Assembly (NCBI GenBank): GCA_964036045.1
Contig: OZ038378.1
Location: 53,692,001-53,756,000 of the forward strand
Direction: 5' to 3'
From: Eutreptiella sp. 'Long Island Sound 2002'
Taxonomy: Eukaryota; Protista; Euglenida
DNA length: 64,000 nucleotides
In this document: piece by piece, positions 593 to 61,399 of the stretch
How the letters are laid out: the number at the start of each line of letters is the position of its first letter
Numbering within the stretch: the stretch's first letter is position 1
Translations under genes and position numbers: made by a program
The notes under the pieces: generated by a model
Told to the model about the DNA's origin: nothing
Seen by the model: only the letters and a program-made list of their open reading frames with translations
Databases searched by the model: none

Positions 593-869
593 TTCGTTTG
601 CTTTTATTCCATGTTTCCCCTCTTCGTCTTAGCTCTCAAATTATTGACAATGGCCCTTGCTGCTCCCGACGCTTGGGGTGTGTCGCTAGAAGGTGTGCGT
701 AGAACCCCCCTCCCCCCTTTGGGTACCACTAGAACCACGATGTGCAGGCGTTTACAATGCCTATCAGTCACAGTAGGAGTTCCTATAAGTGTCCTAAGTC
801 CAAAGCAAGCCTAGCTTGTGAAGGGCCACACGCTATGTTGAAGTTCCAAAAATGACCAAAAGCGCACAA

Positions 870-1028
870 AGTTGGGTTCCAGCACGGGTTCCGACGCAAA
901 AAGGGGGGTTCCAGCAGGGGTTCGAGCAGGGGTTCTAGCGCAGAAAGGGGGTTCCAACATGGGTTCCAACAGAAGGTTGCAGCGCAGAAAGGGGTTCCAA
1001 CAAGGGGTTCCAGCAGGGGTTCCAGCAC
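870..1028 (+). repeat. E1/E2-type intergenic block of GGGGTTCCAGC-like short repeats
   Basis: Many degenerate copies; similar blocks at 9965-10190, 11990-12132, 13880-14045, 55380-55540, 57720-57900, 59240-59370 and 61100-61255. Confidence 0.85.
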
Positions 1029-1065
1029 CTTTGTTTCACCTTTGTTCCCTTCCATTTCAGCCCAC

Positions 1066-1784
1066 ATGCCTTTGTTGGCCCCCTTGGTCGACTGGGCCAA
1101 GGCTGCCCGGGCTGCCGTGGGCACTCGGGGCTATGTTGGCCCCGATGGGTTGGGCTGCACCGACCTCGCCGCCCACCCCGACACCAAGGTGGCGATCCCC
1201 TCGGCACCACCATTGCCCGCATCTGCCTCACGCGCCCCCTTCTCGCCGCCGACAAGCCGCCTTGCGCCCTCACCGACGGGCTGCAGGGGGTCTTGGAGGA
1301 CAACCCCGCCGTGCCGATCCTGCAGGTCCGGCTGCATGCGGACGACGTGGATGATGTCATCCAAGCCTGCACCGGGAGGGCGAACCCCACTATCAACAAG
1401 ATGCAACGGTGTCATGTGGGCGCCATGTGGGGACGGAGGGCACCACGCTTCTCTTCGCCGCCCACAAGCCCACCACCACGAAGGCCGCGAACGACAAGTA
1501 CCCCTTCAAGCACCCCCACCTCGACACCCTCCGGTACATGCGGATAGCAAGCCCGCCATGGCCCTGCCCAACTACTCGCTCAGCAGCCACTCCCCCTACC
1601 GTTGGAAGCCGGAGCTCGTGGGGTTGACTACGCCGGTGCCGATGGAGAGCGAGGACGCGGTCTTGCCCCTCCCCATGTGCCACGCCTTGCCGCTCATTGG
1701 GACAAGCGAACCGGTGAAGCAGGTGGAAGTCTTCCGGGAAGCGAACGAGGAACTCTCGGAGTTGGGTCGGACGGGGCACATGTT
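1066..1784 (+). pseudogene. E1 cargo gene 1, N-terminal domain (frameshifted), fused to the dioxygenase at 8551
   Basis: YSLSSHSPYRWKPELVGLTTP...LPLPMCHALPLIG matches YSLATSTPLHWRPNDRYGLTTP...LPFRMRHPLPLIG (56017 ORF) and YSLCKCTACEWDGDGRGLTLP (46460 ORF). Confidence 0.75.
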
Positions 1785-1974
1785 TGTACCCTTCGTGAAC
1801 CGGTCGTTTGAATCCGAGTTTCACGGTACCGTGAATTTCACCTATTTTTGCTGTGTTTTGCTCGTAACTTGGTGCCACTGTGTGCTTTTGTCGTGCTATC
1901 TTGGCCCAAAGTAAGATGCAACAAATAGGTGCAATTTAGAGGTTTGGATTAGCCGCATGGTTCAACACATTTGG

Positions 1975-2130
1975 TGAGATTCGCGTGAATGTGAAATTCA
2001 CGCACCCAAATTCTCGCATAAATTGGCGCTAGATTCAAAGATTCACGAGAATGTAAAATTTGCACGAATTTGGTACGAATTGCGTACGAATTTCGTACGA
2101 ATTTGGTACGAATTTCGTACGAATTTACCC
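1975..2130. repeat. B-specific palindrome block (AAATTCGTACGAATTT, TCACGTGA)
   Basis: Multiple copies; repeated at 4020-4195, 6120-6260 and 8210-8300, in each case between genes of B. Confidence 0.9.
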
Positions 2131-2192
2131 TCATTTCCACTGTTTCGCTTTCTCACAGCTGTCAAAGCCTTTCGTCGCATTCTCTTTTGACC

Positions 2193-3919
2193 ATGTTCCA
2201 GCAGACTATGTCCCAGCTCGCCAGCCTGGCCTCGCGCCTCGACCCCGTAGCCGACACCCTCGCCCACTACCAAGCCCTCCCCGTCGCCCACCATCAATTG
2301 GAGGAGGCGACGTACCTGTTGGGCGCACTGGGGGTGGATGATGTTGTGGGCTGGGCAGCATCCCTCGACCCCTCCCCCGAGGTCATTCACATCGACGTGC
2401 GCAGCCCCTCCTGCAAGTCCTACCTGGGGGGGAGGGGCTGGGCCACAACGTTGTGGAGGGAACTGCGCTACCAAATCCCCTCCCTTAAATTTCCGCATCT
2501 GACCCCTCTACCTTCCAGCGTTGACGAGCTTCTCAATTCCATGCGCACTAACCGTGCGGGGAAGCATAAGGACGCCCACGTCCAGGTGTACCCCACCACT
2601 AACCTGGTCCATAACCCCCCCTGCGACATGGTGTGCCTGCAGGATCTTGCCGCAGGTGCACCGGCCGACCACTCCTTTTTTCTCTTCTCGTGGCACCTTG
2701 CCAACGCCCGGTGGTGGGATGATTTGGGCATCGCCCCTTTCCATCCCACCGTCCCCCCCCAGGTGTACATCCCCGACATCACCCACCCCACCTTCTACAC
2801 TACAACTGCGTTGCAATGGTACCGTGGTGCCTCAATCCCCCCCCCTTTCATTTCAAGTGAACCCCCCCTCCGCACTGAACCCCTTCCCGACCCCCCTCAT
2901 GGGATGATGGGCAACCCCGACCCCGCCCCCGACACGGTTGGCCCCTCCCAGCCGCCCCTCAACTTTGTTGATGGGAACGGCTACATTGTGCTTCGGGGGC
3001 TTGTGGAAGCACGGGATTGCGAGGTGGGGTGAGCAAGAGCACCTTGGGCCCGGGGGTGGGGGGGCCTCTCTTCAAGAATTTCCACCCTCACCTCACCAAA
3101 AGTGTGCCTTAGGTTGGGGACCTCCACCCAATGACGCCAGGCAGCGTCATCGTGGCGAGTGTGGGGAGTGGGGCCCAGCTCCCCCACTCCGATGTCGCCA
3201 CCCACCCCGAGGTGCTCCCCCCCAACAGCAGGGACATCTCGGGGTGCCACCTGAGTACCTTCCTGTGCTTGTCAGAGGACTACCAGGTGGCGGTGCAAGC
3301 GGGGACGGCCCTAGGGGAGGCGGGGGAGGCACGCTGGGACACCATTCAGGTGCAGAGGGGGGACATGTTGCTGATGGTGGCCACTCGCCGCGACCATGGG
3401 TTGCGTGCCCTCCCCGACTCCAAGGATGGGCTGTAGGGGGCTGTTTTTAACTTGTGGACCCCCGACGGCGTGCACAAACACCATCAGCCCAACACCACGC
3501 ACCTGGACCCCACTCCCCCCAAGGAGGCCCCGGACGTTGCTGGCGATTTGTCCAGCTAGGACTTCCCTAGCGTGGACCAGGTGTTGTGGGTGGGGAAGGG
3601 GGCGGTTGGGAGAGTAGGGTTGTGGGAGGGGAATGCTGCCCAGGCCCTCTTCGCCGACCCCCCCCGGGAGTCGGTCCCGGCCGGCCCCCCCACCTCCCCC
3701 TTCCACCCCACCTTCCTCTCCTGGTCGGCCCCGGCCTCCGACCTCGCCGTCATCGAGGTCGGGGAGCAGTGCATGTTCTTCTTCGTGGGGCGCGTGCACC
3801 AGCCGGAGGTCTGCAAGGGGGACAATGCCGATGCGGAGGCGGAGATCCACTTTGCCATGACCGGCATTGCTCCCCCGGGGCGGCCAACCACACTGTGGCA
3901 TCCGGCGAACACGGCCTGA
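2193..3919 (+). pseudogene. B cargo gene 1: N-terminal domain plus PhyH-like 2OG-Fe(II) dioxygenase
   Basis: NFVDGNGYIVLRGLV resembles a PhyH N-terminus. SGAQLPHSD gives the HxD motif; QRGDMLLM...RDHG gives a distal His. In-frame TAG stops at 3434 and 3557 and a frameshift near 3030-3060. Confidence 0.65.
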
Positions 3920-4275
3920 GCGTGGCGGTCGCCCAAGTGCGCGAAGGCCGGGGCATGGGCAATCACATGCCCATGTGAGTGCAAGGTGTGCTTGCTTGTG
4001 TGTTTGCTTTGTTCAATGGCAAATTGGATGAAATTCACGTGGAATTCGTACCAAATTCGTACGAATTTTGTTCGAATTTCGTACCAATTTCACGTGAATA
4101 AATTTCTGTGAATATTGAGGCAATGTGGAATTCGTACGACATTGGTACGAATTTCGTACGAATTTCAGACGAAATTCTGTGAATTTCGTCCAATTTCTTC
4201 GTTTTGTCGTTGCATTGCTCCATGTTTGCTCGCCCATTCTCAATTGGTGCCTTGCACACTTCTCCCCTTCTGTAG

Positions 4276-5728
4276 GTCCCGTTCTACGCGTGGTCGCCGG
4301 ACATTCGGCACCACACCCGGCGCCGGTACAAGCCCCGGCCTCGATTGCCCGAGGAGCACGGCGAGCCGCCCGGAGGCACCGGTGGTGGACGGACCCCGAG
4401 CGAGTCCGGCAGTGGGCGCAGTGTGGGCTCGCGGCGCTCTGGACGTTCTGCACGGACCGGCAGCGAGGCCAGCACCGTTGCGGGGCATGTGCCGCGCGAG
4501 CTGGTCGTCCCCATGCTGTCCCTCGAAGACTTGGGCACTGTCCACACCGAGTCCTCCCCGGACCGGGTCACCCTGGCGCCCAGGCAGCCGGATCCGGCCT
4601 GGACGCAGAAGGTGCCGCCCTGGCCCGATGGGGGGCAGCGGCATCTCTCTGCCGTGTGGGACATGGTCTTGCACCCCCGGGGGGTGCAGGGCACCCTCCG
4701 CATCTCCTTCCCCTGCCGCATTGTGGTCATGGGGGGATCCAACCTGCCCAAGGGGCAAGAGCTGGTGGGCCTGTTTGCCTACAGGCTTGTGAGCGGGCAG
4801 TGGCGGGTGTAGACCGGGGTGGCGCGGATTGGGGAGGAGGGGACGGCGACCACGGCTGCGGTCTTTGGGCTGAATGTGGTCACGGGGTGGGACAAGCGGA
4901 GGCCGGACTGGGTGGACGTCGCATGGCTTGGCATGCGCGTCCATGTGGGGAGGCAGCGGAAGATGGGGGTTGATGACGTCATTGACGTCGAGGGGCAGGA
5001 AGAACCCCCCACCCCTTGGGCCCGGAAGCGGAAAGGCCACCCCCCCCAAGGGGACACCGAGCCCCCCCCCCCCCCCTCAAAAGCCCCGCGTACGGCCACC
5101 CCGGCGGAGCGGGCAGAGCGGGCGGAGCCGACGGCGGGGCGGGGGCACAGGGGGGCGGTGCACAAGTGGGTGCAGCTGCAGTAGAAGCTGCAGCGGTCGG
5201 GGGCCTGGGAGGCGCGCGCGATCAGGGCGGAGGCCGCCAACCGCGACCTACAGGCCCGCCTGTCCAGAGCCATCTAGGACAGGCAGGACGCCGAGTCGCG
5301 GTTGGTGGACGTCACCAAGGAGCGGGGCCGCCCAGCCACCACGGTGAAAACTCTGGAGCGCGACCTGGCGACGGCGCTCAAGGCAAAGCCACCGGCACAT
5401 GCAGCACAGGCAAGGGAGGGGCCTGAGGGTGCCGAGGCCCCCGGGTGACAGGCGGGGGGGGGGGGGCAGTTCCGCCGGTATCTGGTACCTTCCGGCCGAG
5501 GCATGCGCCGGCCAGATGTCGGCGGTGTCCACCGGCATGCGGATGGCCATGATGGTCAGTGGCCAGCAGGCCGATGTGGATAGCGTGGCCCCCGACGCCC
5601 CGAGGGTGAGTGCCGCACGGGAGGAGGTGCGCCGGCAGTACCCCCCCCCCCCCACCCCCTCACTCCCGCGCTATGGACCCCTCCTTTTTGGAGGCGCTGG
5701 CGGAGCAAAGCTCCCAGGGCTCCGCTAA
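4276..5728 (+). pseudogene. B cargo gene 2: beta-rich domain followed by coiled-coil
   Basis: Long frame after a ctgtag acceptor, interrupted by TAG at 4810, 5182 and 5275. C-terminal EARAIRAEAANRDLQARLSRAI is heptad-like. Confidence 0.55.
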
Positions 5729-6314
5729 CCGGAGCTCTGCTCCAGGGGGGGGGGGGGGGTAGCTCACCCTTTTACTTCGGGACCACCCGTCCCTCTTCTC
5801 CACGGACGTTATTTGTACATTTTTATATATGAATGTATGTACAAATATCCTTTCCCCCCCCCCCCCCAAGCATGGGCAGTTTGAGTGACATGTGGGGCAC
5901 TCACCCCCCACTTTGCGACATTTTCTTCAGCACTGTTTGTCTTTTATTCGGGATCTTCTATGCCCCCTGATGTGTTACACTGTTGACTGTGTGTCAGCCG
6001 GAATGATGACCATTGGACTGGGTGTGTGGTAAACCATGAACTCCATCCTTTGCTTGCTTTGTGAGGACCAACGAGGGCAAAAGGATGAGTCAAATTTTCT
6101 CTTCGGCAGAAATTCTCTGACAGTCACGTGAAATTCGTACAAAATTGGTACGAATTTCGTACGAATTTCACATTGCCTGAATATTCACACACATTCATTC
6201 ACGTGAAATTCTCATGAAATTTGTACGAATTTTGTATGAATTTTTGTGTATTTCGTCCAATTGCGTGCGAATTACACTAGATTCCCACAAACTTTAGTTA
6301 TCCGGGACAGGGGG

Positions 6315-7918
6315 ATGGTAGAAACCTGCGATAAATGCCTCCCCCATTCCACAGGTCTTGTACCTCACACCATGCCGCGGCCCAAAGAGCCATTCCATTT
6401 GTTAGCGGGTCGTACACAACGAAGGTGCCTACAAGAGCTCCAGCAAGTTGTTACCAAGGAGCTTGCAGCACCCTACACCGTCAAGTACCTGCCCGACACG
6501 GGGCAAATAGTGCTTACCCCCGAAACAAGAGTTGTACTGACCGTCCAGCCTCAGCCCACCATGGAGGATAGGTTGATTATGGCCGTTTGGCGGATTTGGT
6601 CATTGCACCTCTCTAGGACGGAGTCGCGGTACCTAGTGGGGAGCATGACGTACAGTGTGGTATGGGACCACGTGTACGGCATGCTTCGGCAGCTAGCGTT
6701 ACCGGAGTCTCGGGCGTTCACTGCCCATACAGGAGACGACACGGCCATCCATGGTTCGGCTTGCTACCTACCTGACCGCATCGGCCACCTGTTCAAGTGT
6801 TGACCACCCCCAACCTGGGACATCATGCAGCCCGGGGACCGACGGCTCCATTGCTTGCCTATTGCGGTGCACGGTACATCGAGGCATGAGGCCTCGCACG
6901 TCCATCGCACGCTTGGTGGCACCGCTAGCCCGAACCAACTATCTAGTTGGTGGCTATTAGGGGTCAGTGAAAAGTGGGAGACCCTCTACGCGGCCTCCCA
7001 AGAAATTGATTTTGATGACGAGTTGCACAAGGCCGCAACCGTAAGTTTTAAGAATACGGGAGGGAACGATAGGCAGTCCCTTTTTTTTTGTGTGCAGAGG
7101 GGAAAGCACGGGTCCTCATGGCGGGCTGCCAAAACAGTAAGGCAGAATCCCCTGGTGCCACCGTGTGTTGGGTCTGCATGCGTAACCGTGCTCTGTGCCT
7201 TGCCACCTTTGGCATAGCAAGTGTGATAGACGGCAATCAGGAAGGGGCTGTTGCCATAGGTGCTATATATGGGACCATTACGAGTGATAGGCGAGTGCCT
7301 GATTCTGGCCTCCATGGGGTCCTTCGTGTCCTATTTTGTGGCATCAACGGGACACGGGACCTAGTTGTACAATTGACAGGGAAGGCACCGGCCACCGTGG
7401 CACGCACCATGCTGCAACTGGTTCTAGATGAGGCATGGCTTGCTGCACGAACTTGCACCCGTGCCTCATTAAATAATGACAAGGCAAACAGCAAGGAGAA
7501 GGTGAGGATGGAGTGTGCTGCTGCCATCCATTTCATGCGGACAAGGGTTGGGATAAGATAATAGATGCTTGCCTACAGCAGCCTAGTCTGAGGCAGGCAC
7601 TAAGTAGGGGGAAAATGTTGGGAGTCGGTGTGCAAAACGTGGTGGGAGAATTTTGCAAGCATGTGTGTATACGCGTGGCGTTACGCATGGTTCTCCGGGG
7701 CCGACTTGGGGCGGCTCCGGAACTATAGCATAGCCATGGGCGCTGCCCGGAATGAGCTGCAGTGGGGCACACTTCTGTGGACGCATCTTTGGATCGACCA
7801 CATGTATTATTTTGCAAAGAAGTGGAGAATCTTGTCAAAGTTCTCCTGCTTTGCCACGGAGGGAAGTCACCGGAGGCTGAAGCGCATGTTGCGCAACACC
7901 GGGGGCAAGTGGTTGTGA
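6315..7918 (+). pseudogene. B transposase, RAG1/Transib-like DDE
   Basis: PRPKEPFHLLAGRTQRRCLQEL (NBD-like), PIAVHGT, LCAEGK...CWVC, PDSGLHGVLRV, WTHLWIDH...FSCFATEGSHRRLK. Several frameshifts. Confidence 0.72.
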
Positions 7919-8550
7919 ACAACCACACCATTGCTGATAGCCTTTGGTTGCATGGGTGGAACGGACCAAAAGGGCACAACATGGGCAAGGGCCCATAAGT
8001 GTACAAACATATGCAAGCAGTACAAGAAGACGGCTTCTAACCGACATGCAGTACCTTCAAACTCTACAGTGGCGGTTCCGGTGTCGCAAGAGACGGACAT
8101 GAGATCACCACACAAACGTAGACCACTGTTGCCTGTGACCGGGATGGATGCCGGGACGCCTATTAGGGGTGTGAGGACAAATCAGGGGTGGCACACCGGT
8201 AACAGCTGAGTAAAATCACGTGAATTCACGTGAAACTCGTACGAAATTCGTACGAAATTTGTGCGAATTTCGTACGAATTCACGTGAATTCATGTGAATC
8301 GGCTACAGGGTTACCGGGTTTAGGCACCTCTCGTTTTGGGCACGGTTCGGGCGTGATGGATGCTTTCGGGGCGGGACCTTCATTGCATGATCCGTAATGA
8401 AGCTGGGGGAAGAATTTTGGCCCCTCAAATCCCTCGGAAGGATCCAGAAATATGGCGTTTTCCCCCGACAACCTCAAAATTTGGGTAAATTCACGTGAAA
8501 TTCACGCAATTATTCAAACGGCCACTTAAGCCCCGTTCACGAAGGGTACA

Positions 8551-9941
8551 TTCAAGGACGGGTTCCTAGCGAGGGATGGCGACTTGCTGGCGAACATGAA
8601 GATCGAGGCGGACAACGTAGGTCACAGGTGGGTCGGCATCTTCAACGTGGCATGGCCAAGCCCAAACCGGCCACCCGATCCAGGTGACAGGGCTGCGGTG
8701 TACGCGGTGTTTCGGACGGACAAAGGGGGTCAAGAAGGTCTTCAGCTTCCTCACGTTGTACTTTGGGCGCAAGGACTTGTGCAACGCCTCTCTACGAAGT
8801 ACCCGGGTCTGTTCTTGGTGAAGGTTGGGTACCTTCGGGCAACGTCGGATCAGCCACAACTATGGCATCGGGATCTTCCGCTGGAGTTGCCAATCGTTGG
8901 GGTGGAGCACGCCTTCTCCTGCTTCATGCCTGTGAATCTGGACTGCCCCATGGACGGCCGGGAGAACATGTTCGTGTACGGTTCAGGCTCTGGTGATCCC
9001 TATCCGTGCCAGGAGGTCTTGATGAGTATGGTGGCGGGCGACCTGTGGATACTGAACAGTTACGTCATTCACCGTGGTGGGGCTGTCCCGAGACATGTGC
9101 CGCCTGGATCAACCCGTATCATTGCCTTTGCCGCCATTGCCACACACCGCGTCGACTACGAGACCCCCATGCCGATCATCCCGCCTCCCTGGGCTGAAGC
9201 CCCCGCGCAAAAAACCGTCGCCACCGTCCCCGAAGGTCGTGCACTGTACAGCAGTGCAGTGCAACCGCGTGGTGAAGGCCGACCCGCCAGGGAAGTGTTT
9301 CGCCTTTGACGAACGTCCCCTTTGTGCTCCAAATGTCGGGCAACTCTTTGAAGACTGTCAGCGGGATTCTGGCTATCCTGCAGTGGAGGCCGCCCCTGGA
9401 GCTGCTGTGGAGGCCGTGGCGATGTCAGCCGAGTGAGCACAGGAAGTCGATGAGGACCTGGGGACGCAGAAGATCGTGGAGGAGGATCTGTGCGGGTTTG
9501 CGGCTTTGGTGATGATGCCCTTGGACCAGACGGTGCTGTACACCACCCATCGCCCAGGGCCACTGGCGGCAGAGATTTCTGCTCGGCTGGTGATCCACGC
9601 GTCCGCCCAACCCTCCGCCCCCGAAGATTGTCCCCTTGGCCCCTTTGCCCGGGGAGGAGGAGTTGGAGGCCCCGACCACAAGCAAGTTCCACATCATCGC
9701 CACGCAGCCGGGCAGCCTAATGGTGGTGCGAGAAGGCCAGGTGGGTGGGATGGCAGTGGTGGAGGACACCTCGGACCCCCCGGTCGCCCAAGTACTTGGA
9801 TGGGATGTTGCCGGCACCCACCCGCGCGTCGTTGCCACGTCTCTCCTGGTCCAATCGGGGCTTCTGGTGGCCAACCCTGAGCGCCTGAAGGAGTACTGGT
9901 GCCTTGCCAACAGATATGAGCCTACAGTGTGGCGGGGCTAA
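8551..9941 (+). pseudogene. E1 cargo gene 1, C-terminal part: PhyH-like 2OG-Fe(II) dioxygenase, Cys-rich segment and C-terminal domain
   Basis: QPQLWHRD...AGDLWILNSYVIHRGG...RIIAF. The C-terminal TSKFHIIATQPGS...LLVQSGLLVANP matches TSHFPLVKTNPGT...ILVESGLVLENP at 57326-57729. Confidence 0.75.
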
Positions 9942-10229
9942 GGCTTTAGGCACAGCAGGCCTCGGGGGGGGGGGGGGTGCTGGAAGGTTGCCGGAAGGGT
10001 CGGTGGAAGGGATTCCAGCGCTCGAAGGGTCTGCTGAAAGGGTGCCAGAAAGCTGCTGGAAGGGGTTCCAGCACTGGAAGGGTCCGCTGGAAGGGTCCGC
10101 TGGAAGGGGTTTCAGCGATGGAAGGGGGGTTCCAACAGGGTTCCAGCCAGGGGTTCCAGGGCAGTAAGGGGTTCCAGCAGGGGTTCCAACAGGTATCGTA
10201 TCACGCGTTTTACCTGCATTTCGTCCTCT

Positions 10230-11374
10230 TTAAGGCTACAGTGGATGTCTGGCCTGAACTGGTACAACGGGACGAGTCGGTGGCCGAGCCCGAGGCGCGA
10301 GGGGATAGTGCAGTATTTGTGGTGGACAGCGTGTCGGTCGCGTGGCTGGCCCGTGAGGTGGTGACTTCGCCAACGAGTGCAGCAAGGAAGCCGGGGGCCG
10401 TGGCCCAGCTCATGTTCCAGTCTGGTCAAACGCCGTGATACAAGGTTTTGGAGCTCAATGTGGCGATAGCGAGCGGCTAGAAGGTGGTGTGCACGTTTCC
10501 GGTGCGAGTGAAGGGTGTGCAAGGCAAGAAGCGAGCTGGGTACATCTTTGGCGTTGGAAAAGGGTTGCATGGATCTTGGTGGTACCAAATGTACCATGAG
10601 GAGGATGGGCGGAGCGTGTGGTATGGTCTGCGGGGGTTGCAAGGCGTTGGAGGAGATGAGGTTCCGGAGTCCGCCATGAAGGTGTTCGCTGCCTGGGTGA
10701 GGGAGCGCAAGAAGACTTACGTTGGTGGCCGAGGGCACACAAGGGGCGCTGCGATTGAGGTGGAAGGAGACGACGATGATGCCGACGACAAGGAGCAGCC
10801 GAAGGACAAAGACAAAGACAAAGGCAAGGACAAAGCCAAGGACGAGCCAAAGGAGAAAGGCAAGGACAAAGGCCAGCGCAAGGACAAGGACAAGGACAAG
10901 GACAAGGACAAGGATAAGGACAAGGACAAGGACAAGGACAAGGACAAGACAACCCGGGCATCTCAGTCACCGCAGTCGCAGTCCCAGCAGTCCCAGAAGT
11001 CCCAGCAAATGGTTGACGCTTGGGCTATGGCTGAGGAGGTGGTACAGCGGTGCAAGGACTCCTTGACGCAGCAGATGAGAGTGACCCTCATAGATTGCGT
11101 CCCTTCGGCAGTGGCAAAGGCGATGTTTGACGCCTTCAAGAGCAAGGCAGAGACACTGATTGGCCGGCTGACCAAGCAGCTTGAGACGGAGCGCACGGGA
11201 CAGGCGAACGCCAAGGCCCAATTGCACAATGAGCGGAAACGGGTCAGGGAGTTGGAGCTGGAGAATGAGAGCATGAAGAAGCAGCTGGTGGAGAGCAACA
11301 CCAAAACGGCCGAAGCAAAGCAACACGCAGAGCAGCTGTTGGCGGTGATTGCGGGCAATTACAAGAAGGCGTAG
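10230..11374 (+). pseudogene. E1 cargo gene 2: coiled-coil protein with KD dipeptide repeat
   Basis: ORF 10484-11374 with (GACAAG)n encoding KDKDKD at about 10800-10948 and a heptad-rich C-terminus. Upstream frame broken by stops. Homologous in position and sequence to 57930-59056. Confidence 0.65.
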
Positions 11375-11377
11375 GCA

Positions 11378-11580
11378 CTGGAGACGAGACCTTTTGGGAC
11401 CTGGAGACGAGACTTGTCGGCACCTTTTGGGACCTAGTGATGAGACTGGTTGGGACCTGGAATAGGAGACCTGTTGGGACCTGGAGAGCACACCTGTTGG
11501 GACCTCGAGAGCACACTTGTTGGGACCCGGAGAGCAGATCTTTTGGGACCTGGAGAGCAGACCTGTTGGGACCTGAGATA
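11378..11580 (+). repeat. Tandem repeat of about 20-22 bp (TGTTGGGACCTGGAGAGCAGACC-like)
   Basis: About 9 degenerate copies directly after the stop codon of the coiled-coil gene. Confidence 0.85.
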
Positions 11581-12161
11581 ACACCTGCATGTGCATGTGC
11601 ATGTACGTGGTGCGCTGCGATGGTGCTGACGGCAATGCGCCACCTTGAACGGAAACCTTTTTTGGTCTTAGCTCCTAGGTTGCGTGTTACCTCGCGTAGG
11701 ACATTAGTTGCGATGTGCACGAAGTGCCTAAGGTGGTGTCACGAGTGGGAGGCTTCACATAGCCTACCCCTTGGGGACGTCACCAAGGTTTACGCCCTAT
11801 ATGCATGCATTCATTCAAAGTTTTGATATATTATATCATTAGCCTGTTTGATTCTGGACTGAGGGGGGTGGTACCATGGGGTGCAACACATGCATACACT
11901 ATACGACATTGCAAAGTGTTGACCATGACGTTGCACTCTGCCTGTGCCTGGTCTTTGGGCTCAATGAGAGGGAAAGGCAAAACAAGGGGGGGGGGCAGTG
12001 CTAGAAGGGGGTGCTGGAAGTGGTGCTCGAAGGGGTTCCAGCGCTGGAAGGGTTCGCTGGAAGGGTCCGCTAGAAGGGGGTTCCTGTGCAGAAAGGGGTT
12101 CTAGCAAGGGGTTCCAGCAGGGGTTCTAGCGGTCACACCTTGCCCGTTTGTCACAGAAACC

Positions 12162-13702: not shown

Positions 13703-14235
13703 ACGTGGAGACCCTTGACGTGGGGTTACGACACTGAGCGGCCCTGCAAAGGCTTGTTCTTGGCGAGGCCACAAAGGACCGAAGAAAAAGGCACTGCATG
13801 TACGCTTGAGAAACCAAGTTTGAACCCGGTGGATGCATTTAGTGCCCTTCTTGCAAAAATCCTTTGCGCACAAACCCCCCCGCAGAAAGGGTGCAGAAAG
13901 GGGGTTCCAGCGCACAAAGGGTGTACAGAAGGGGTGCCGAACGGGGGTTCTAGCGCACAAAGGGGGGTGCACGAAGGGCGCACAAAGGGTGCAGAAAGGG
14001 TGAAGAAAGGGTGCTAGAACCCCACTTCCAGCAAAAGGGGGGGGTGTAGAAAATCCGGCAAAACGGACCGTTTCGGACAAAAGTGAAAATCAGCCACCAA
14101 AAGGGGCATAAACATGTGGTGATTGGCCCCAAACCACTTTCTAACCACACAAGGTGGTGCGGCTGGGGTAATCATGCAAAAAGGGCGCTAGAAGGGGGGG
14201 GTCTTTGCGCACACCTTCTAGCGACGCACCCCACT

Positions 14236-21129: not shown

Positions 21130-27183
<6,054 letters not shown>

Positions 27184-29389: not shown

Positions 29390-29426
<37 letters not shown>

Positions 29427-47218: not shown

Positions 47219-47730
47219 CTTCACCCTTGGGGGCACCACCGAGATTTCCAAGTTTCATGTCATGAATTGCCAGCTCTCACTTCAAGCTCATTGATTCCTT
47301 CTTTCATGGACGCATTTGCATGGCATGTGTGAGTTGGAATGCAGCCAGGGATGCATTGTCTTGCCCCCATGTGACAACGGTGTCTAAAGGGACCCGGGTA
47401 GCATTTGTTGTGGTTGCGATAGGGGCAGCACACCGAAACACCAGGTACACGAAGGCGGGGGGGTTCGTGTGCAGAAGGTGTCTAGGAAGGGGTACAGGAA
47501 GGGGGTTCTTGTATGGGAAGGGGGGAGGTTCCTGTGCAGGAAGTGGTCCAGGAAGGGGTCCACGAATGGTTTTCTTGTACACGAAGGGGGGTTCTTGTGG
47601 GGTTCACGGGACAATTCCTGGCCAGAAAGGGGGGGGAGGTTCTTGTGCAGGAAGGGGGTTCAGGTGGAGTTCCTGTGGCACTTCTTGTGCACATCTTGCC
47701 CTCACAATTCTTGGAAGGTTTTCATTTTAA

Positions 47731-55012: not shown

Positions 55013-55587
55013 TTTAGAGCTTTGTGGAGTTGGCTAGCGTCCATGCAGGTCCAAGTGTTGATGCATTTGAAGCCAAAAGTCATGAAAGTATGATGATTTT
55101 TCCATGTTTACCAATCTTTACACGGTGCGGAGCACTTTTACACGAGTGGCTGAATTTTCCTCGTGTATGACAGATGTTACCCCCTTTGCCATTGGGTGCG
55201 CCGCTGGAAGCGCTCCTCTGGAACCCCCCCCCCCCCTTTATAGGACACTCGTTGGGTGGGGGCTACCATGCCACGTCCCCTCACTAAAGAAATATGTTGC
55301 TCCTAGTGTTTGTTAGTGAAGATAACAGGCTGTACCATTGCCCGCTTGCTTGATTTAAGATTGGTTCAAAAGTGCTGAAACCCCCGCTAGAACCCCTTCG
55401 AGCACTTCACTAGAAGGGGGTTTTAGCGCTAGAAGCGGGGGGTTCCAGCGCCGGAATCGGGTTCCAGCGGGGGTTCCAATGGGGGTTCAAGCGGTGGAAC
55501 GGGGGCTCCAGCAGGGTTCGAGTAGGGGCTCTAGCACTCGTTCTACCTCCATAGTCGCTGCAGTCCACTCACGCTTCTAACACTATT

Positions 55588-57729
55588 ATGATTTTCACCT
55601 TGTTCATGGACCGCTCGAATTTTCCGGTTCTTACATCTTGGCTTGACAATGCCCTTGTGGGGAATCGTGGATATTCAGCCCTTGTTGCTTGTGAACTTCA
55701 AAGTCTCACAGCTCGAACCACAGGTGCTGCAGTTATTTTCAAGCCCACCACCACCGTTGGTGCGCCCAAGTGAGGGGGTCGATCATGCATGATTGTACTC
55801 CTTTGTGTGGTGACCGATTACATCACCGACGTCATGGACAAAAACCCCCAAGTTCCCATTTTTCAATTCTCCCTTCATCCGAAATACGTGGAGGATTCGC
55901 ACCTCAACATCGCCTCTGGGCTCCCCACCAACTCCAACAGCACTGTGAAGCTGCATGTGGGGGATGACTAGTCCGGCGAAGTCCTCTTTGCTAAGAGGCG
56001 CCCCACAAGCAATAAGATGGGCAATGACAACTATTTACTCCCCCAACCCACAACTCACACACTCCACTTCCTCTCCCTCAAAGACGCACATAGACAGATG
56101 CTCATCTACTCGTTGGCCACATCCACCCCGTTACATTGGAGACCTAACGACCGCTATGGCCTTACCACCCCCACCATGATGTCCACTACCGACGAGCAGC
56201 CCTTCCTGCCTTTTCGTATGCGCCACCCCCTTCCATTGATTGGGAGCAACTAGGAGGTTGTCTCTAGGTCGCCCTTGGCACACCCACCAATGAGAACCCC
56301 AATGCCATCGCCAACTTTGGGCTTTGCCCCTACCGTGGTAACTTTGCCCACTTCCCGGTCCATAACGCCACCCAGGACGAGTGCATCACCGTTCCGGGTC
56401 ACAAGTGAGGGTCCGTCTTCAACGAAAATGTACCGGCTCCAGGTCGTCAAGAAGACAGCCCTGGTCGATGTGCGTGCTATAGCCGCTTGGGACTGCCACT
56501 ACTGGATGAAGAGGGGATGGAGCTGCCGGCCTTGGGCGCCCTCGCCAAGGAAGTACAGTGGGAATTGCAAAAAGTGAAGGAGTTTGAGGATATTGTGTTT
56601 TTTGGGGCTAGCTCTCTCCGCGCTACCAATGATAGGCGGCAACATTGGCACCGGGATCGCCCCTTGACACACAAGACTCAAGGGAGAGCCCTCTCCATAT
56701 TTGTGCCGTGCAACGTAGATACTCCCGGCGATGCCTCTTGTGGTCGATATGTGCCTTTCTCCCATAAGGGTGTGCCGAAGCCCTTGTACGAGTACCCGCT
56801 AAATATGGATGTTGGGGATATGGTCATCTTCACGTCAGAGTTGATTCTCTGTGGCGGGGCGTTCCGGTGGGGCTACTTGCAGGCACTCCTCGGATCATTG
56901 CCCTCATTGCGCTGGCTAATTACAATTTGCACTACAACAACACCGTGCCGATTTCCCACCCACCATGGGCGCATGCCGAAGCGCAGGTACAAGCATTGAC
57001 GGAGAAATGTTGGCGCAATGGATGCCGCAAGAAGGTCCCACGGCCCCCGCCCGTATGCTTCATGTGCCACAAGGTCCCACTGTGTCAAATCCATGGAACT
57101 GTAACTTGCTCCGCCTACGATGCAACACTTACCGCCCCCCCGAACTCTTTGCAGTGCTTGCTCAACATTCCTCCCTTGGTAGTCTATCGCAAGGTTCTTT
57201 AGCATCCGTGGGACCAAGTTGTGTCTGTAGGTTCGCCGACAGATGCCTCATGCCGCTGGGAAATAGTGGAGTTATGACACAACACCTGCCAGAAGCCCCC
57301 GGCGCCTATTAGCCCGCAACAGCCCGTGGATGTGCAAGCAGCACCATGCCTCCCGGAAAACGGCCCTTTCGGACCAGACACCCATGAGGAGGAGTGCCCA
57401 CCGCAACCCACTTCCCACTTCCCGCTGGTCAAAACAAACCCCGGCACCATCCTCATCATCTGCTCAGGACAGTTTGGGGGCACAACCAAACTCCGGACCC
57501 TGATGGGGATGAACTATGTGTCCTACCATGGGATCAAGTACCAAGGGAGACGCAAAATGTCGTGGACGCCATGATCCTTGTTGAATCTGGCCTCGTGCTG
57601 GAGAATCCAAAGGAGGCGGGCGAGTACCTGTGCGCATGCCAACATGTCGCCGTCGGTAGCTCTCGTGCGGTGACATCTCATTTTGATTTGTGGTTGCAGA
57701 TTGCATACGGACACCGTGCGCTGTGCTAG
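55588..57729 (+). pseudogene. E2 cargo gene 1: N-terminal domain, PhyH-like dioxygenase, Cys-rich segment and C-terminal domain
   Basis: RRQHWHRD...VGDMVIFTSELILCGG (distal His apparently lost); CWRNGC...CFMCHKVPLCQIH. Colinear with 1066-1784 plus 8551-9941. Confidence 0.75.
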
Positions 57730-57929
57730 AAGGGGTGCTGGAAGGGGCTTGCAGCGCTAGAAGGGTTGTTGGAATGGGGGGGGTTCTAGCGCTAGAAGGT
57801 GGGGGGTTCCAGCGTTGGAAGGGGGGTTCCAGGGCTCGAAGGGGGGTACCAGCTGGGCTTCCAACATGGGTTCCAGCGCTTGAAGGGTGTTCCAGCACTC
57901 ACTTTAAGGGGTTCAATCTACAATGTATG

Positions 57930-59056
57930 ATTGGATCGTTTATATACCACCTTCCTTTTGTGCTCAGGCCACACTGGACATCTAGCCGTTGCTGTCTCTG
58001 GTGGACGGGAGCAGCAGGAAGCCTAGGAGCTCCCAAAAGTTCAGATTTCGCTAAAGGGTCCGGTTCCGAAGCCCAAGGTTGTGACGCCCGACATTGGTGG
58101 GGAAGTGGACATCCAGGCGATAAAGTGGGCGGCAACCGTGGGTTTGAGTCCAGAGGACTAGACCCAGAGTTTGTTTCTGAAGGGGAAGACTAATTGGTAC
58201 CGATGCCTAAGTTTGCGTGTTAAGACTCAGCAACCACATTTGTTGGTACTCCGTTTGCCTTTGCGCATCACACACAATCACAAACCATCACGCCAAGAGT
58301 CATTTTTGTGTGCGACCGCCACAACATAGGCACACAGAGCATAAGCCTACCAGCTGTGGGATGCTTCAGCAGATGAGTGGGACGTTTGGCACTCTTTGAA
58401 GCGAGTTGCCAATGTATTTTCCTGCGGAAGTGCAGAGCCATGTGGACAAGTGGGTTGCTGAACGTGTTGCGGAGCCGTTAACAGGGTGGGGCCACAAGGC
58501 TGACCCCTGGGTTGTTGAGGAGGATTCTGCAGAGCTTGCCGAAGGTGTCCCTAAGGGTAAGACGGCCGCGAAGGTAGAGGGCAAGCCCACAAAACCCCCG
58601 ACCAACCCCGCCCCCAAGGCCAAGGCCGCCAAGCCCACACCCCCTGTCAGCGCCCCCCCTGCGGACCCGGCCCCCATTCCATTTCCCCTGGAGGAAACGC
58701 TGCGGGGCATTTCTGATGGCGTGGTGCACACAGTAGAGGGAAATGTGCAAACCACATTGAGACATATTTTTCCTTCTGCCATGCGTGAGGCTCTGAAGGC
58801 AGAATTGGCAGCCAAGGCGACCCGTGAGGTGCAGAAGCTTCGTGGGGAGCTCGCTGTAGCTATGAGTCAGGTAAAGGCCGCAGAGAAGCGAGCACAGGAG
58901 CTCCAAGAGACACAACATGACACCAAAAGGCAAAAGCTAGAGTCACAGGGCGAATTGAAGCACATTTCAAGAAATGTGGGAGGAAGAGAAGGACCGGTCC
59001 AACAAGTACCTCTCAATTTTGGAGAAGCAAAAGTGAAGAAGTTTCGCCTCGTGTGA
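57930..59056 (+). pseudogene. E2 cargo gene 2: Pro/Lys-rich linker plus coiled-coil
   Basis: ORF 58406-59056 (KAELAAKATREVQKLRGEL...). Upstream LFLKGKTNWYRCLSLRV resembles LMFQSGQTP*YKVLELNV of E1. Confidence 0.6.
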
Positions 59057-59393
59057 GTGAGGGTGCGGATATATATGGCGCCCTTTTGCACTGTGCCACA
59101 TGTGGGCCACTTGAGATGCGGACTGACAGATGCCAAAAAAGACACCCGAAAACTTTCTTGGTGCAAAGCGTGCCAGGGGACACGGACCCTAGTAACTGCT
59201 TTAAATGATGCATGAGCTGGTAGTATTTGACACCGTTGAAAAGGTCGTTGGAAGGGGGTTCCAGCGGTGGAAGGGGGGGGGGGTCCGGCGCTACAAGGTG
59301 GGGTTCAAGCACTTATTCTAGCGGGGGTTCGAGCGCCGGAAGGGGGTTCTAGCGGGGGTTCTAGCGCCCATTCCTAGTCTGTGGGTGTCTTAA

Positions 59394-60950
59394 ATGGACA
59401 AGGCTTTGGCAGCGTTTACGCAAGCAGTACCTCCCCTAGCGGCCTATTCGCAACTCAAGGACCGCGCACGACGTGAGAGGTGCGTGCTCATTGACACAGT
59501 CCTGGCAGCACTTTTCGTGGGGGGCACGCCGCTAGTTGAAGAAACCGCGGATGGGCTTTTCATCCGTAGCAGCATGTACTTTGAAGGGGAGGACAGCCAG
59601 GCCTATCGGGCTGTAGTTCGCGTCTCGAAATACGCCGTGGAGTCCAACGTCTCGATCCCGCAAATATTGAGGTTGTCACAGCAATGCACGCAACGCGACC
59701 TTCGCAACCCGCAGCCCCGCTTGACATTGTACACGGCGGAAACACCGACCGTCACCGGGGGGTCCATGCACCATAGGACTGCAAAAGTGACACAGCTGAA
59801 GGATGTTGTGGTAAACCAAGTTCAACTGGCAATGGCCGAGGGTAATTACAAACATAATGGGACTAAACGATGCATCTGGGCGGTTGTGGTGCCCGATGGA
59901 ACTCCTTTGTGGAAAACTAGTGTTTCAAAAGCGGATTTCTTTGTCCATTTTTGGGAGGAGGGCGTGAAAGGTGCTGGACACATTGTCCGTTGGGCAATGT
60001 GCCTGTGCATGGACGGGCCCGATGACGCTGGCTGTCTCCTAGCTCTGGACGACATAGGCCAACTCAATAAACCAGTACATTGCTGTGTTGCAGAGGGACA
60101 CCACATTTTTCATCGATGGCGATTCGTGGTGGTTCATGGTGTTCCTCTCTCGGGATAGCAAGTTGATGGCCGTAACAAACGGCCCGGGAAAATGTTGCCG
60201 TTGTGACGATGTTACTATTGTACGTCCATTGGACCATGTCTTCAAACCTGTTCGTTGGGGCTCCTTCTTGCGGAGTATCAAGGCGGACCGTCGGGTGGGA
60301 GACGTGGTCCGTGCTGCCTGCCGCGTGACATGCGCTTTCAAGAAGCGATTATCTGATGATATTGCCCGGTGGTTGGTTGGGGTGGTTGGCCAACGTGCCA
60401 TGGCCCGTGAATTTCATGAAATTTCGGGTGAGATATTGCATTCCAGCCGCGGAGCGAAAGGACCTTTTGCCTGAAAAGGCAAAGGGGTGAACATATGACA
60501 TTAGCACGGTTGGACTTTTTTGGGACCAACCCGCAATTCAACAACGGCTCACGGTATTCCTCCAAACGCACTTTCGAGGTATTATTTGCAACGGTGTATG
60601 TATTTATGTTCTTGTTGCCGCTTTTTTTGCGCGATTTTGGTGCACTTCACACACAATGGCGCAAAAAAGAATATCTTCTTGACGTCGAGGTGGCCTGTGC
60701 CAAAGCTTTGTGTGTAAGCATTGGCACATGTTGGCAGATATAGGGGTGCAAGGCCACTCCATGTGTCCATGGGACTGCCGCCCACTCACACTACTTCCTT
60801 GCCAAATATCGCACTTTATATCTATTTTCCAATGTACCCGCCCAATACGGGCACCGCCGATTTAATACGCAGGTGAAAAACTCCATGCGTGGATGGTCGC
60901 ACCAAAAGCCACGCGTGTGGAAATGAGGCTTGCGCCATGTGCTTCACATG
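59394..60950 (+). pseudogene. E2 transposase, RAG1/Transib-like DDE
   Basis: VVVPDGTPLW, CMDGPDD, LSRDSKLMAVTNGPGKCCRC, RWGSFLR and ATPCVHGTAAH...FSNVPAQYGHRRF. One frameshift near 60090 and some stops. Confidence 0.75.
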
Positions 60951-61399
60951 AAGATTATGCAAATTGGCTTGCGGCACTACATTGCATGCAAGGGCTGTGC
61001 ACTATTGAAAAGACAAGGGCGTTGAACTACAAGGACATTGTCCTGCATCGATGAGCTGAATTGTAATCGGTTTTTGCCACCAGTGCGCGTTTTGGTGACG
61101 TTGGGATGTGCGCCGGAAGGGGGGTTTTCGGCACGTGAACCCCCGTTGGAACCCCCTTCCGGCGCTAGAAGGGTTCGTTGAAAGGGGGTTCCATCGGGGG
61201 TTCCACCGCTGGAAAGGGGCAAAAAAAGTTGCCGGAAGCCCGCGAGAAGGGGGTTACAGCACTACTTCAAGCACTTTTTGCGTGCCCAAGTGCTCCGCAA
61301 GGACTGGGTGACCACGAACACCCAAGTGATGTGCATGGTAAAAATTTGTGCTAGAAGAGGGGGGTGCTGCAGAGCGCTTCCAGCGGCGCACCCCAAATG

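What the first reader, a model, noticed from the sequence alone, without database searches (positions are those of the whole stretch)
674..61395. Candidate new family of giant multigene TG...CA transposons: dioxygenase, coiled-coil and RAG1-like transposase
Seen: E1 (674-14233), B (1785-8550), E3 (38394-49814) and E2 (55193-61395) have TG...CA TIRs and the same plus-strand order: N-domain/PhyH-like dioxygenase, coiled-coil gene (absent in E3), DDE transposase. Short-repeat blocks separate the genes. Their proteins are clearly diverged yet colinear, so this is an old, diversified family and not a recent duplication. Related ends bound X and X'. Known: cargo-bearing DNA transposons that couple TET/JBP dioxygenases to KDZ or Plavaka transposases occur in fungi and algae. 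Inference: a fixed three-gene module pairing a PhyH-type dioxygenase with a RAG1/Transib-like transposase is not a combination I recognise and may be an undescribed group.
Basis: partly seen in the sequence, partly recalled or inferred. Interest (0 to 1): 0.95.

Follow-up and report, generated by a model that had tools for sequence, protein, structure and literature searches.

The report
RAG1-like transposons carrying a dioxygenase
The window holds five decayed copies of a family of 4-7 kb cut-and-paste DNA transposons. Their transposase folds like RAG1/Transib, the enzyme lineage behind antibody gene rearrangement, they carry a PhyH-type dioxygenase gene, and I found no description of the family in Pfam or in the papers I could search.

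Summary
E1, B, E3 and E2 have real TG...CA inverted ends at the stated coordinates and the same plus-strand gene order, and arrays of short palindromes lie before and after every gene.

Corrections:
- The elements are 4.1-6.8 kb, not giant. E1 is long because B sits inside its first gene. E3 is long because it holds an unrelated 7.3 kb transposon.
- The target duplication is 2 bp.
- All window copies are dead.

The transposase matches no Pfam family and no PDB sequence. A confident AlphaFold model (pLDDT 85) matches only RAG1, RAG1-like and Transib structures (49 hits, E down to 1e-8). It has the D, D, C(2)C, H(4)H, E motif order of the CACTA-Mirage-Chapaev-Transib (CMCT) group.

Gene 1 is a PhyH-like Fe/2OG dioxygenase with a conserved HxD...H...R motif and a Cys-rich tail.

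The family is large: 695 clusters in public data, almost all from metagenomes. Its 11-nt terminus is conserved in relatives from other samples.

The module is not fixed. The coiled-coil gene is optional, one distant relative has the order transposase then dioxygenase, and element X' carries a piggyBac-like gene.

Verdict: a probably undescribed lineage of a known kind. Repbase and Dfam were not checked. The host is unknown.

The parts
674..14233 (+). E1. The element proper is 6.8 kb (674-1784 plus 8551-14233), interrupted by B. TIRs at 674-699 and 14208-14233, flanking CT/CT.
   Evidence: TIR alignment. Paralogous copies L005 and L006 align across the B insertion point at 84-88% identity. 2-bp TSD.
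886..1026 (.). E1 block 1, a palindrome array about 40 bp upstream of gene 1.
1066..1784 (+). E1 gene 1, N-terminal part (YSLxS...W motif), cut by the B insertion.
   Evidence: ORF translation; alignment with intact paralogues.
1785..8550 (+). B, a 6.8 kb divergent family member nested in E1 gene 1. TIR TGTACCCTTCGTGAAC, TSD TT. Blocks at 2035-2148, 4010-4198, 6099-6273 and 8212-8303. Gene 1 about 2193-3450 (HSD motif at 3131-3436). GC-rich gene 2 about 4200-6000. Transposase remnant 6315-8209.
   Evidence: empty site in L005/L006.
8551..9309 (+). E1 gene 1, C-terminal dioxygenase domain (WHRD ... IHRGG ... STRII).
10003..10190 (.). E1 block 2.
10481..11374 (+). E1 gene 2: a KD-rich low-complexity region followed by a coiled coil. 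No known domain.
   Evidence: Missing in copy L006.
11989..12141 (.). E1 block 3, directly upstream of the transposase.
12150..13731 (+). E1 RAG1-like transposase pseudogene, read in 6 frame segments.
13895..13965 (.). E1 block 4, between the transposase and the right TIR.
28253..34381 (+). X', a 6.1 kb family member. 36-nt TIR beginning TGGGATGCGC, TSD TG. Internal repeat blocks. piggyBac-like ORF 31767-32993 directly after a block. About 95-aa C-terminal remnant of the RAG1-like transposase at 33731-34013.
38394..49814 (+). E3. The element proper is 4.1 kb (38394-38540 plus 45837-49814). TIRs at 38394-38431 and 49778-49814, flanking AG/AG.
38541..45836 (.). Foreign 7.3 kb transposon nested in E3. 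It is not part of the family. TIR CTTAGACGGCCCAAGTT, TSD ACCAA.
   Evidence: empty site in L003
46007..47218 (+). E3 gene 1 (N-domain plus PhyH-like domain), frameshifted. Preceded by block 45860-45975.
   Evidence: Intact paralogues P0351 and P0352 hit PhyH.
47457..47700 (.). E3 block upstream of the transposase.
47731..49506 (+). E3 transposase, an uninterrupted 591-aa ORF (P0001). It has G171, E256, G307 and Q475 at conserved D, D, D and H positions, so it is probably inactive.
49506..49640 (.). E3 block after the transposase stop codon.
55192..61395 (+). E2, 6.2 kb. TIRs at 55192-55215 and 61372-61395. Blocks at 55421-55535, 57708-57884, 59218-59377 and 61147-61226. The TSD is not preserved.
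55955..57202 (+). E2 gene 1, frameshifted. PhyH-like domain at 56487-56999 (distal His replaced by Leu), Cys-rich tail at 56867-57202.
58406..59056 (+). E2 gene 2, coiled coil.
59394..60974 (+). E2 RAG1-like transposase pseudogene, read in 4 frame segments.

Best explanation

Shown. Each element has roughly 25-40-nt inverted ends, 5'-TGRGGTGCGCC...-3' (TGTACCC in B), and a 2-bp target duplication. It carries one to three intron-poor genes on one strand: a PhyH-type Fe(II)/2-oxoglutarate dioxygenase with an N-terminal domain and a Cys-rich tail, an optional coiled-coil protein, and a DDE transposase with the RAG1/Transib fold and the D, D, C(2)C, H(4)H, E motif order. Every gene is bracketed by a 70-250-bp array of lineage-specific palindromes, which ends 15-60 bp upstream of the start codon. 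The inner part of the TIR repeats sequence from these arrays.

Inferred.
- The transposase cuts at the conserved terminal 11-mer. As in Transib and RAG, it probably nicks the DNA and forms a hairpin, then joins the ends with a 2-bp stagger.
- A DNA-binding part of an element protein recognises the palindromes. This marks the ends, as the nonamer does in an RSS or subterminal repeats do in CACTA elements, and co-regulates the genes as separate transcription units.
- Because the arrays are alike, genes behave as cassettes that are lost, gained or reordered by recombination between arrays.
- The dioxygenase most likely helps the element escape host silencing by oxidising a chromatin or nucleic-acid mark. 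Its substrate is unknown.
For: Mobility.
- More than 100 gene-1 paralogues (60-85% identity) and 22 E3-type transposase paralogues lie on Mb-size contigs; every copy whose locus I fetched is in one assembly, ERZ25074135.
- Full or deleted copies carry the same TIRs.
- Matching 2-bp flanks occur in 6 of 7 elements: CT, TT, AG, CG, CA, TG.
- Empty sites are seen for B and for the nested element.
- A related family is 99.7-99.9% identical at four different flanks across samples.

Transposase.
- The model has pLDDT 84.8 and pTM 0.78.
- Foldseek returns only RAG1, BbRAGL and HzTransib at E<=1e-3.
- Motif columns in A3: D171 in 23 of 26 residue-bearing rows, D256 25/26, C270 27/28, C274 27/28, H470 22/25, H475 23/24, E495 21/23.
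- H470 and H475 lie 25 and 20 residues before E495. From my memory, RAG1 H937 and H942 have the same spacing before E962.

Dioxygenase.
- PhyH is the only Pfam hit in seven members. L008's protein scores 27.9 bits and P0364 22.5 bits against a cut-off of 22.
- H325 and D327 are invariant; the distal His and the Arg are conserved.
- Weak PDB profile hits are all PhyH-type enzymes aligned on both motifs.

Arrays.
- The same layout with different palindromes occurs in L007, L008, L009 and L011 from other samples.
- TIRs and arrays share 9-mers within lineage groups.

Cassettes. L006 lacks gene 2, L008 has a permuted order, and X' carries a piggyBac-like gene.

Silencing context. CpG observed/expected is 0.57-0.80 in all loci. 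TET/JBP dioxygenases in fungal transposons are a precedent (PMC12730594).
Against: - No copy in the window can be active, so nothing about the mechanism is shown directly.
- Hairpin chemistry is inferred from the fold alone.
- The termini are TG...CA, not the CA...TG usual in this group.
- Sharing between TIRs and arrays is only group-specific. E1 and E2 cross-match, X' shares no 9-mer with its own arrays, and L008 shares one.
- PhyH enzymes are not known to act on DNA or chromatin. The window's own gene-1 copies score below Pfam's cut-off or not at all.
- L008 is a short-read contig, so a misjoin through the repeats cannot be fully excluded.
- Repbase and Dfam were not searched.
Confidence: 0.75

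Rival explanations
1. They are ordinary members of an already described CMC lineage (CACTA/EnSpm, Mirage or Chapaev) or of Plavaka that happen to carry extra genes, so there is nothing new beyond the cargo.
For: The 2-bp TSD fits Mirage and PlavakaA. B's TGT...ACA ends fit PlavakaA (PMC12730594). Several genes plus repeated protein-binding motifs recall CACTA TnpA/TnpD. The C(2)C and H(3-4)H motifs are shared by the whole CMCT group. No CMC structure is in the PDB, so a RAG1 best hit is expected for any CMCT member.
Against: Eleven diverse members, including P0001, give no Pfam transposase hit at E<=1. The termini are not CAC.... No paper with this gene combination was found.
Confidence: 0.2
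2. The multigene elements are accidental strings of smaller one-gene elements, with each repeat block being the end of a separate unit, and do not move as one transposon.
For: Blocks flank every gene and resemble the inner TIR. Gene content and order vary between copies. The family of P0208 (a metagenome transposase from a related family) may be transposase-only.
Against: The terminal TGRGGTG 11-mer occurs only at the outer ends. Whole multigene units recur as paralogues with 2-bp duplications at the outer ends only. B inserted as one 6.8 kb unit into a site that is empty in the paralogues.
Confidence: 0.05
3. The dioxygenase is a passenger host gene with no role in the element's life cycle, for example a metabolic PhyH enzyme captured once.
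For: Known PhyH-family enzymes act on small molecules (FtmOx1 and AusE). Cargo capture is common in large DNA transposons.
Against: The gene is present in E1, E2, E3, B and L008. It has the same three-part architecture and diverges as much as the transposase does (24-31% against 26-48% identity). Its catalytic residues are kept across lineages. Its gene starts directly after the element's own palindrome array, like the other element genes.
Confidence: 0.15

Closest known systems
Transib transposons / RAG1 (including BbRAGL ProtoRAG)
   Same: Whole-length fold match of the transposase. D, D, C(2)C, H(4)H, E order, with the two His 25 and 20 residues before the Glu. Bipartite ends: a conserved terminal motif plus an inner recognition motif.
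   Different: 2-bp rather than 5-bp duplication. Ends are TGRGGTG...CACCYCA, not CAC...GTG. No sequence-level hit to RAG1 or Transib. No RAG2-like gene. Additional dioxygenase and coiled-coil genes. Internal palindrome arrays.
CACTA/EnSpm, Mirage, Chapaev (CMC)
   Same: Short duplication (2-4 bp). Shared Zn-ligand motifs. CACTA has two proteins and arrays of short subterminal binding motifs.
   Different: Termini do not start with CAC. No Pfam Transposase_21 or related hit. Arrays lie between all genes, not only near the ends.
PlavakaA (fungal; Kojima 2025, PMC12730594)
   Same: 2-bp duplication and 5'-TGT..ACA-3' ends, as in B. Member of the CMCT group. The sister lineage PlavakaB carries a dioxygenase.
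   Different: Plavaka carries TET/JBP, not PhyH. No Pfam Plavaka hit. Most members here end in TGRGG. The host here is not shown to be a fungus, and relatives come from aquatic metagenomes.
TET/JBP-carrying transposons (KDZ, ESTA, EnSpm, hAT, Helitron in fungi)
   Same: A DNA transposon that keeps a Fe/2OG dioxygenase gene next to its transposase. The host genome is CpG-depleted.
   Different: A different dioxygenase family with no known DNA substrate. The anti-silencing role is only an analogy.

Membership tests
Transib superfamily | Transposase with the RAG1-core fold | tested here: met
   The 49 best PDB matches are all RAG1, BbRAGL or HzTransib, E 1e-8 to 7e-4. The next is Hermes at E 0.046.
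Transib superfamily | 5-bp target site duplication | tested here: not met
   2-bp duplications in 6 of 7 elements, one proven by an empty site.
Transib superfamily | Termini 5'-CAC...GTG-3' (RSS-heptamer-like) | tested here: not met
   Ends are TGRGGTG...CACCYCA, or TGTACCC...GGGTACA in B.
Transib superfamily | Detectable sequence similarity to Transib/RAG1 | tested here: not met
   No Pfam family at E<=1 for 11 members. No PDB chain with the single protein or with the profile.
CMCT group (Kojima 2025) | [quoted passage not shown] | tested here: met
   CWxC at 270-274 and HWxxxH at 470-475 between D256 and E495, conserved in 22-27 of 30 aligned sequences, or 88-96% of the rows that have a residue at that column. 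Definition from PMC12730594.
CMCT group (Kojima 2025) | 2-5 bp target duplication | tested here: met
   2 bp.
CMCT group (Kojima 2025) | 5'-CA..TG-3' termini (stated as 'in most cases') | tested here: not met
   TG...CA. PlavakaA is the known exception with TGT..ACA.
CACTA/EnSpm | CACTA termini, 3-bp duplication, Transposase_21-type domain | tested here: not met
PlavakaA | 2-bp duplication with TGT..ACA termini | tested here: inconclusive
   Met by B only. The other lineages end in TGRGG...CCYCA. There is no Pfam Plavaka hit, and no phylogeny was possible.
PhyH (PF05721) Fe/2OG dioxygenases (gene 1) | Pfam PhyH match at or above the curated cut-off | tested here: met
   The L008 orthologue scores 27.9 bits over profile positions 2-204 of 213, and P0364 scores 22.5 bits (cut-off 22). 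Five further members, including E2's ORF, score 15-21 bits with PhyH as the only hit. E1's copy gives no hit.
PhyH (PF05721) Fe/2OG dioxygenases (gene 1) | HxD...H iron triad and a 2OG-binding Arg | tested here: met
   H325 and D327 are invariant. The distal His in IHxGG and the Arg in GSxRII are conserved. E2's copy has lost the distal His.
PhyH (PF05721) Fe/2OG dioxygenases (gene 1) | Double-stranded beta-helix fold | not tested
TET/JBP-carrying transposons | TET/JBP dioxygenase domain | tested here: not met
   No TET/JBP Pfam hit in any gene-1 protein.

The most novel reading that the evidence does not exclude
This is a large, unrecognised deep branch of the RAG1/Transib lineage living in microbial eukaryotes. 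Three things would set it apart.
- Its ends are built like a recombination signal: a conserved cleavage motif plus a lineage-specific binding motif.
- The same binding motif, repeated in arrays, organises the element into exchangeable gene cassettes.
- A PhyH-type dioxygenase has been recruited for a nucleic-acid or chromatin substrate to counter host silencing.
Probability: 0.25. Interest if true: 0.85.

Novelty: new variant of a known kind. Interest (0 to 1): 0.65.

Why it matters
- Transib/RAG1 relatives are regarded as a small group. One broad survey recovered only 35 Transib transposases (bioRxiv 10.1101/2021.09.26.461848). Here a RAG1-fold transposase family has 695 clusters at 50% identity in public data, and Pfam does not detect it.
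- If it is a separate deep branch, it widens the known diversity from which V(D)J recombination arose. It would give new, possibly active, natural enzymes for studying how end recognition and hairpin chemistry evolved.
- The palindrome-bounded cassette layout is an unusual organising principle for a eukaryotic DNA transposon.
- A PhyH-type dioxygenase kept by a transposon would be a second, independent case, after TET/JBP, of mobile elements carrying an oxidising enzyme. That makes the idea of transposon-encoded anti-silencing testable outside fungi.

Tried and rejected
- A first AlphaFold run on a 6-sequence alignment failed (pLDDT 33). The 149-sequence alignment fixed this.
- I first read GDxVHxxxRxxN as the second catalytic Asp motif (CACTA style). 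The model's strand order and the alignment place D2 at TGDGK instead.
- The 7-bp flank match at E3 (AGGACAG) is not the duplication length. The target was a short tandem (AGGAC)2AG, and five other elements show only 2 bp.
- No PDB sequence hit with the single protein or with the profile.
- Viral structure library: no meaningful match, TM<=0.24.
- The search for related loci found nothing in viral or JGI metagenome contigs.
- Host identification failed. There is no Rfam RNA in the window. Twenty flanking ORFs gave no informative Pfam hit. Accession searches in papers found nothing for ERZ25074135 or GCA_046766215.
- The second ORF of L002 is unrelated to gene 1.
- X and X' share no DNA similarity, and no family-type ends were found for X.
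- The gene-2 proteins of E1, E2 and B show only marginal similarity (best E 0.031), so their homology rests on position and composition.

Full report
**What is in the window**

The window is eukaryotic and rich in transposons. GC is 53%, CpG observed/expected is 0.72, ORFs are fragmentary, and there are no Rfam RNAs.

The four stated coordinate pairs are true terminal inverted repeats:
- E1, 674/14233, about 26 nt.
- B, 1785/8550, 16 nt.
- E3, 38394/49814, about 33 nt.
- E2, 55192-3/61395, about 24 nt.

A 24-nt E3 end pattern occurs only at E3's two ends, against 0.00 expected by chance.

Translated comparison within the window shows the claimed colinearity:
- Gene 1 of E1 against E2: 34% identity over 157 aa.
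- Transposase of E1 against E2: 33-47%.
- Transposase of E2 against E3: 31-36%.
- Transposase of E1 against E3: 31-40%.

B's third gene is a distant member of the same transposase family (about 25% over 269 aa, E 5.7e-5, plus eight further hits on its C-terminal part).

**True sizes and nesting**

B lies inside gene 1 of E1. Two paralogous E1-type copies from other contigs of the same assembly read straight through the insertion point with a single TT. B is therefore one 6.8 kb insertion with a 2-bp duplication. E1 proper is 6.8 kb.

E3 contains an unrelated 7.3 kb transposon at 38541-45836, with its own 17-nt TIR and a 5-bp duplication. Copy L003 shows the empty site. E3 proper is 4.1 kb with two genes.

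E2 is 6.2 kb. The elements are therefore mid-sized, not giant.

**Target duplication**

Matching 2-bp flanks are seen in six elements:

| Element | Flanks |
|---|---|
| E1 | CT |
| B | TT |
| E3 | AG |
| L005 | CG |
| L006 | CA |
| X' | TG |

Only the degraded E2 fails. E3's 7-bp match arises because it inserted into (AGGAC)2AG.

**The transposase**

E3's 591-aa ORF (P0001) has no Pfam or PDB sequence match. Its close relatives are other copies on Mb-size ENA contigs, those traced lying in ERZ25074135, plus one 40%-identical protein from a different sample.

A profile search of 1.84 billion representative proteins found 695 clusters with E<=1e-3 and 76 with E<=1e-30. The ten I looked up are unnamed and come from ENA, JGI or Logan; one cluster member is in an NCBI assembly. 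Ten diverse full-length members have no meaningful Pfam match, and the profile has no PDB sequence match. Pairwise identities among representatives are 26-48%.

With a 149-sequence alignment, AlphaFold gave a confident model (pLDDT 84.8, pTM 0.78). Foldseek against the PDB returned 49 matches at E<=1e-3. All are mouse or zebrafish RAG1, amphioxus BbRAGL or Helicoverpa Transib, with TM 0.31-0.51 (normalised by query length; 0.41-0.51 for the RAG1 chains) over about 500-630 alignment columns. The next hit is Hermes at E 0.046 and TM 0.18.

The alignment shows this motif series:
- CxDATPLW, with D171 on the first strand of the RNase H-like core.
- TGDGK, with D256 after the fourth strand.
- CWxC at 270-274.
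- HWxxxH at 470-475.
- SSIPxExRNxxFK, with E495.

This is the D, D, C(2)C, H(3-4)H, E signature that Kojima (PMC12730594) uses to unite CACTA, Mirage, Chapaev, Transib, Plavaka, ESTA, Lanisha and RAG1 as the CMCT group. The two histidines lie 25 and 20 residues before the Glu. As I remember it, the Zn ligands H937 and H942 of RAG1 lie at the same distances before E962.

Because no CMC transposase structure exists, the fold match places the family in CMCT but not specifically in Transib. The family fails three Transib criteria: 5-bp duplication, CAC...GTG ends, and sequence similarity.

None of the window copies is functional. E1 and E2 need 6 and 4 frame segments. P0001 has G, E, G and Q at four conserved D, D, D and H positions.

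**Gene 1**

Full-length paralogues (470-600 aa) were recovered. PhyH is the only Pfam family that hits them. It hits E2's ORF, P0351, P0352, P0364, P0366, P0357 and the L008 orthologue, with E from 3.4e-6 to 0.03. Two of these score above the curated cut-off, and two cover almost the whole PhyH profile.

A profile search of the PDB gave only sub-significant hits. Ten of the thirteen are PhyH-type enzymes (FtmOx1/verruculogen synthase, AusE) and one is an unnamed oxidoreductase (9wyc); the printed 9wyc alignment covers both the WHRD and HRGG motifs.

An alignment across E1-, E2- and E3-type proteins and L008 shows the following:
- An invariant HxD.
- A conserved distal His and Arg.
- A shared N-terminal domain (YSLxS...W...GLTxP).
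- A C-terminal Cys/His-rich tail.

B's copy keeps a PhyH-like start (FVDGNGYIVLRG) and an HSD motif.

The assignment as a PhyH-like Fe/2OG dioxygenase is therefore reasonably supported. No fold prediction was possible.

**Gene 2**

Gene 2 is a charged, low-complexity protein that ends in a coiled coil. It has no domain hit, and similarity between lineages is only marginal. It is absent from E3 and from the E1-type copy L006.

**Palindrome arrays**

Every gene is preceded by a 70-250-bp array of short palindromes, which ends 15-60 bp before the start codon. A last array follows the final gene.

- In E1, E2 and E3 the unit is TTCYNGCGCNRGAA with G/C-run spacers: 18 hits against 0.36 expected, all inside the arrays.
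- In B the unit is TTCGTACGAA: 19 hits against 0.72 expected, 18 of them in B.

Relatives from unrelated metagenome samples have the same layout with other palindromes:

| Locus | Palindrome |
|---|---|
| L008 | TTACTGCGCAGTAA |
| L007 | AGTAAGCGSCGCTTACT |
| L009 | CCGGACAGGG..CCTGTCCGG |
| L011 | TTCCAGCGAA..TTCGCTGGAA |

The outermost 11 nt of the TIR (TGRGGTGCGCC) is conserved from the window to L008 and to the family of P0208 (a metagenome transposase from a related family). The inner 30 nt shares 9-mers with the arrays of the same or a closely related lineage. B shares 9-mers only with B. E1 and E2 cross-match. X' shares none with its own arrays, and L008 shares one.

I read this as bipartite ends, a conserved cleavage motif plus a lineage-tuned binding motif, with the same binding motif reused in front of each gene. 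This is inference. It is analogous to the RSS heptamer and nonamer, and to CACTA subterminal repeats.

**Variation of the module**

Within the source genome the order dioxygenase, (coiled coil), transposase is kept (E1, E2, B, E3, L003, L005, L006).

In L008 a left TIR is followed by array, transposase, array, dioxygenase, with no intervening end. The order is therefore not universal. The caveat is that L008 is a short-read contig.

X' (28253-34381) is a further member. It has a family-type TIR, a 2-bp duplication and internal arrays, and only a 95-aa remnant of the RAG1-like transposase. It also has a piggyBac-like ORF placed directly after an array.

X has a 36%-identical piggyBac-like ORF between arrays of GACCGGTC palindromes, but I found no family-type ends.

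**Activity elsewhere**

The P0208 family occurs with an identical protein on 14 contigs. The six contigs fetched come from six samples, one of them from Baltic Sea project PRJEB22997. These copies are 99.7-99.9% identical in DNA and have four different right flanks. The gene contains a GT-AG intron. Some lineages have therefore moved recently.

**Comparison and novelty**

The nearest known relatives are Transib/RAG1 by fold, Mirage and PlavakaA by duplication length and ends, and the fungal TET/JBP-carrying transposons by the logic of a dioxygenase cargo (PMC12730594).

No paper that I could search describes a PhyH-type dioxygenase in a transposon, or a RAG1-fold transposase with these ends. 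Repbase and Dfam were not available.

I rate this a new variant of a known kind: a probably undescribed CMCT lineage with a new cargo and an unusual cassette architecture.

The host remains unidentified. Relatives are common in aquatic metagenomes.

Noticed in passing
window 28253-34381 (X'), plus 35695-35730: X' is a member of the same transposon family: a 36-nt TG...CA TIR, TSD TG and internal repeat blocks. Its main ORF is piggyBac-like (DDE_Tnp_1_7, 31767-32993) and starts right after a block. Only about 95 aa of the RAG1-like transposase remain (33731-34013). A second, solo right end lies at 35695-35730, in a duplicate of 33931-34391.
   Followed up: partly
window about 15600-21060 (X): A second piggyBac-like ORF lies on the minus strand (16105-17383, 36% identical to the one in X'). 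It sits between arrays of GACCGGTC-type palindromes spaced 1-2 kb apart. The layout resembles the family's, but no TG...CA ends were found.
   Followed up: partly
window 38541-45836; related piece at 61638-61886: An unclassified 7.3 kb transposon is nested in E3 (TIR CTTAGACGGCCCAAGTT, 5-bp TSD ACCAA, empty site in L003). Its ORFs have no Pfam hit. A related coding fragment lies just right of E2.
   Followed up: partly
window 47731-49506: E3's transposase ORF is uninterrupted but has G171, E256, G307 and Q475 where the family has D, D, D and H. It is an intact-looking but probably dead gene.
   Followed up: yes
window 21100-27200: A complex region of inverted and direct copies of a 1.3-1.6 kb unit (80-90% identical), interspersed with long (AT)n and other microsatellites. 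It was not classified.
   Followed up: no
L010-L015 (P0208 family; L011 870-3559): An identical 475-aa transposase occurs on 14 contigs; the six fetched come from six samples, one of them a Baltic Sea metagenome. The copies are 99.7-99.9% identical in DNA with four different right flanks, so this relative has moved recently. The gene has a GT-AG intron (L011 1466-1680) that contains a 56-bp tandem duplication.
   Followed up: partly
L008 394-4781: In this distant relative the order is left TIR, array, transposase, array, PhyH gene. This is the reverse of the cassette order seen in the window.
   Followed up: yes
window and loci L001-L006: CpG observed/expected is 0.57-0.80 at 53-60% GC. This suggests cytosine methylation in the host and is relevant to any anti-silencing role of the dioxygenase.
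   Followed up: no
E1-type paralogues aligned past window ~9200 (E1's own copy has lost it); E2 56867-57202; L008 gene 1 C-terminus: Gene 1 ends in a conserved Cys/His-rich motif (C..C, a spacer, then C..C...LC..H....C..C) that looks like a small zinc finger. It has no Pfam hit.
   Followed up: no
L016 (NCBI GCA_046766215.1, JBJNVX010094302.1): One family member lies in a GenBank assembly. Its organism could not be looked up here, but it could reveal a host.
   Followed up: no
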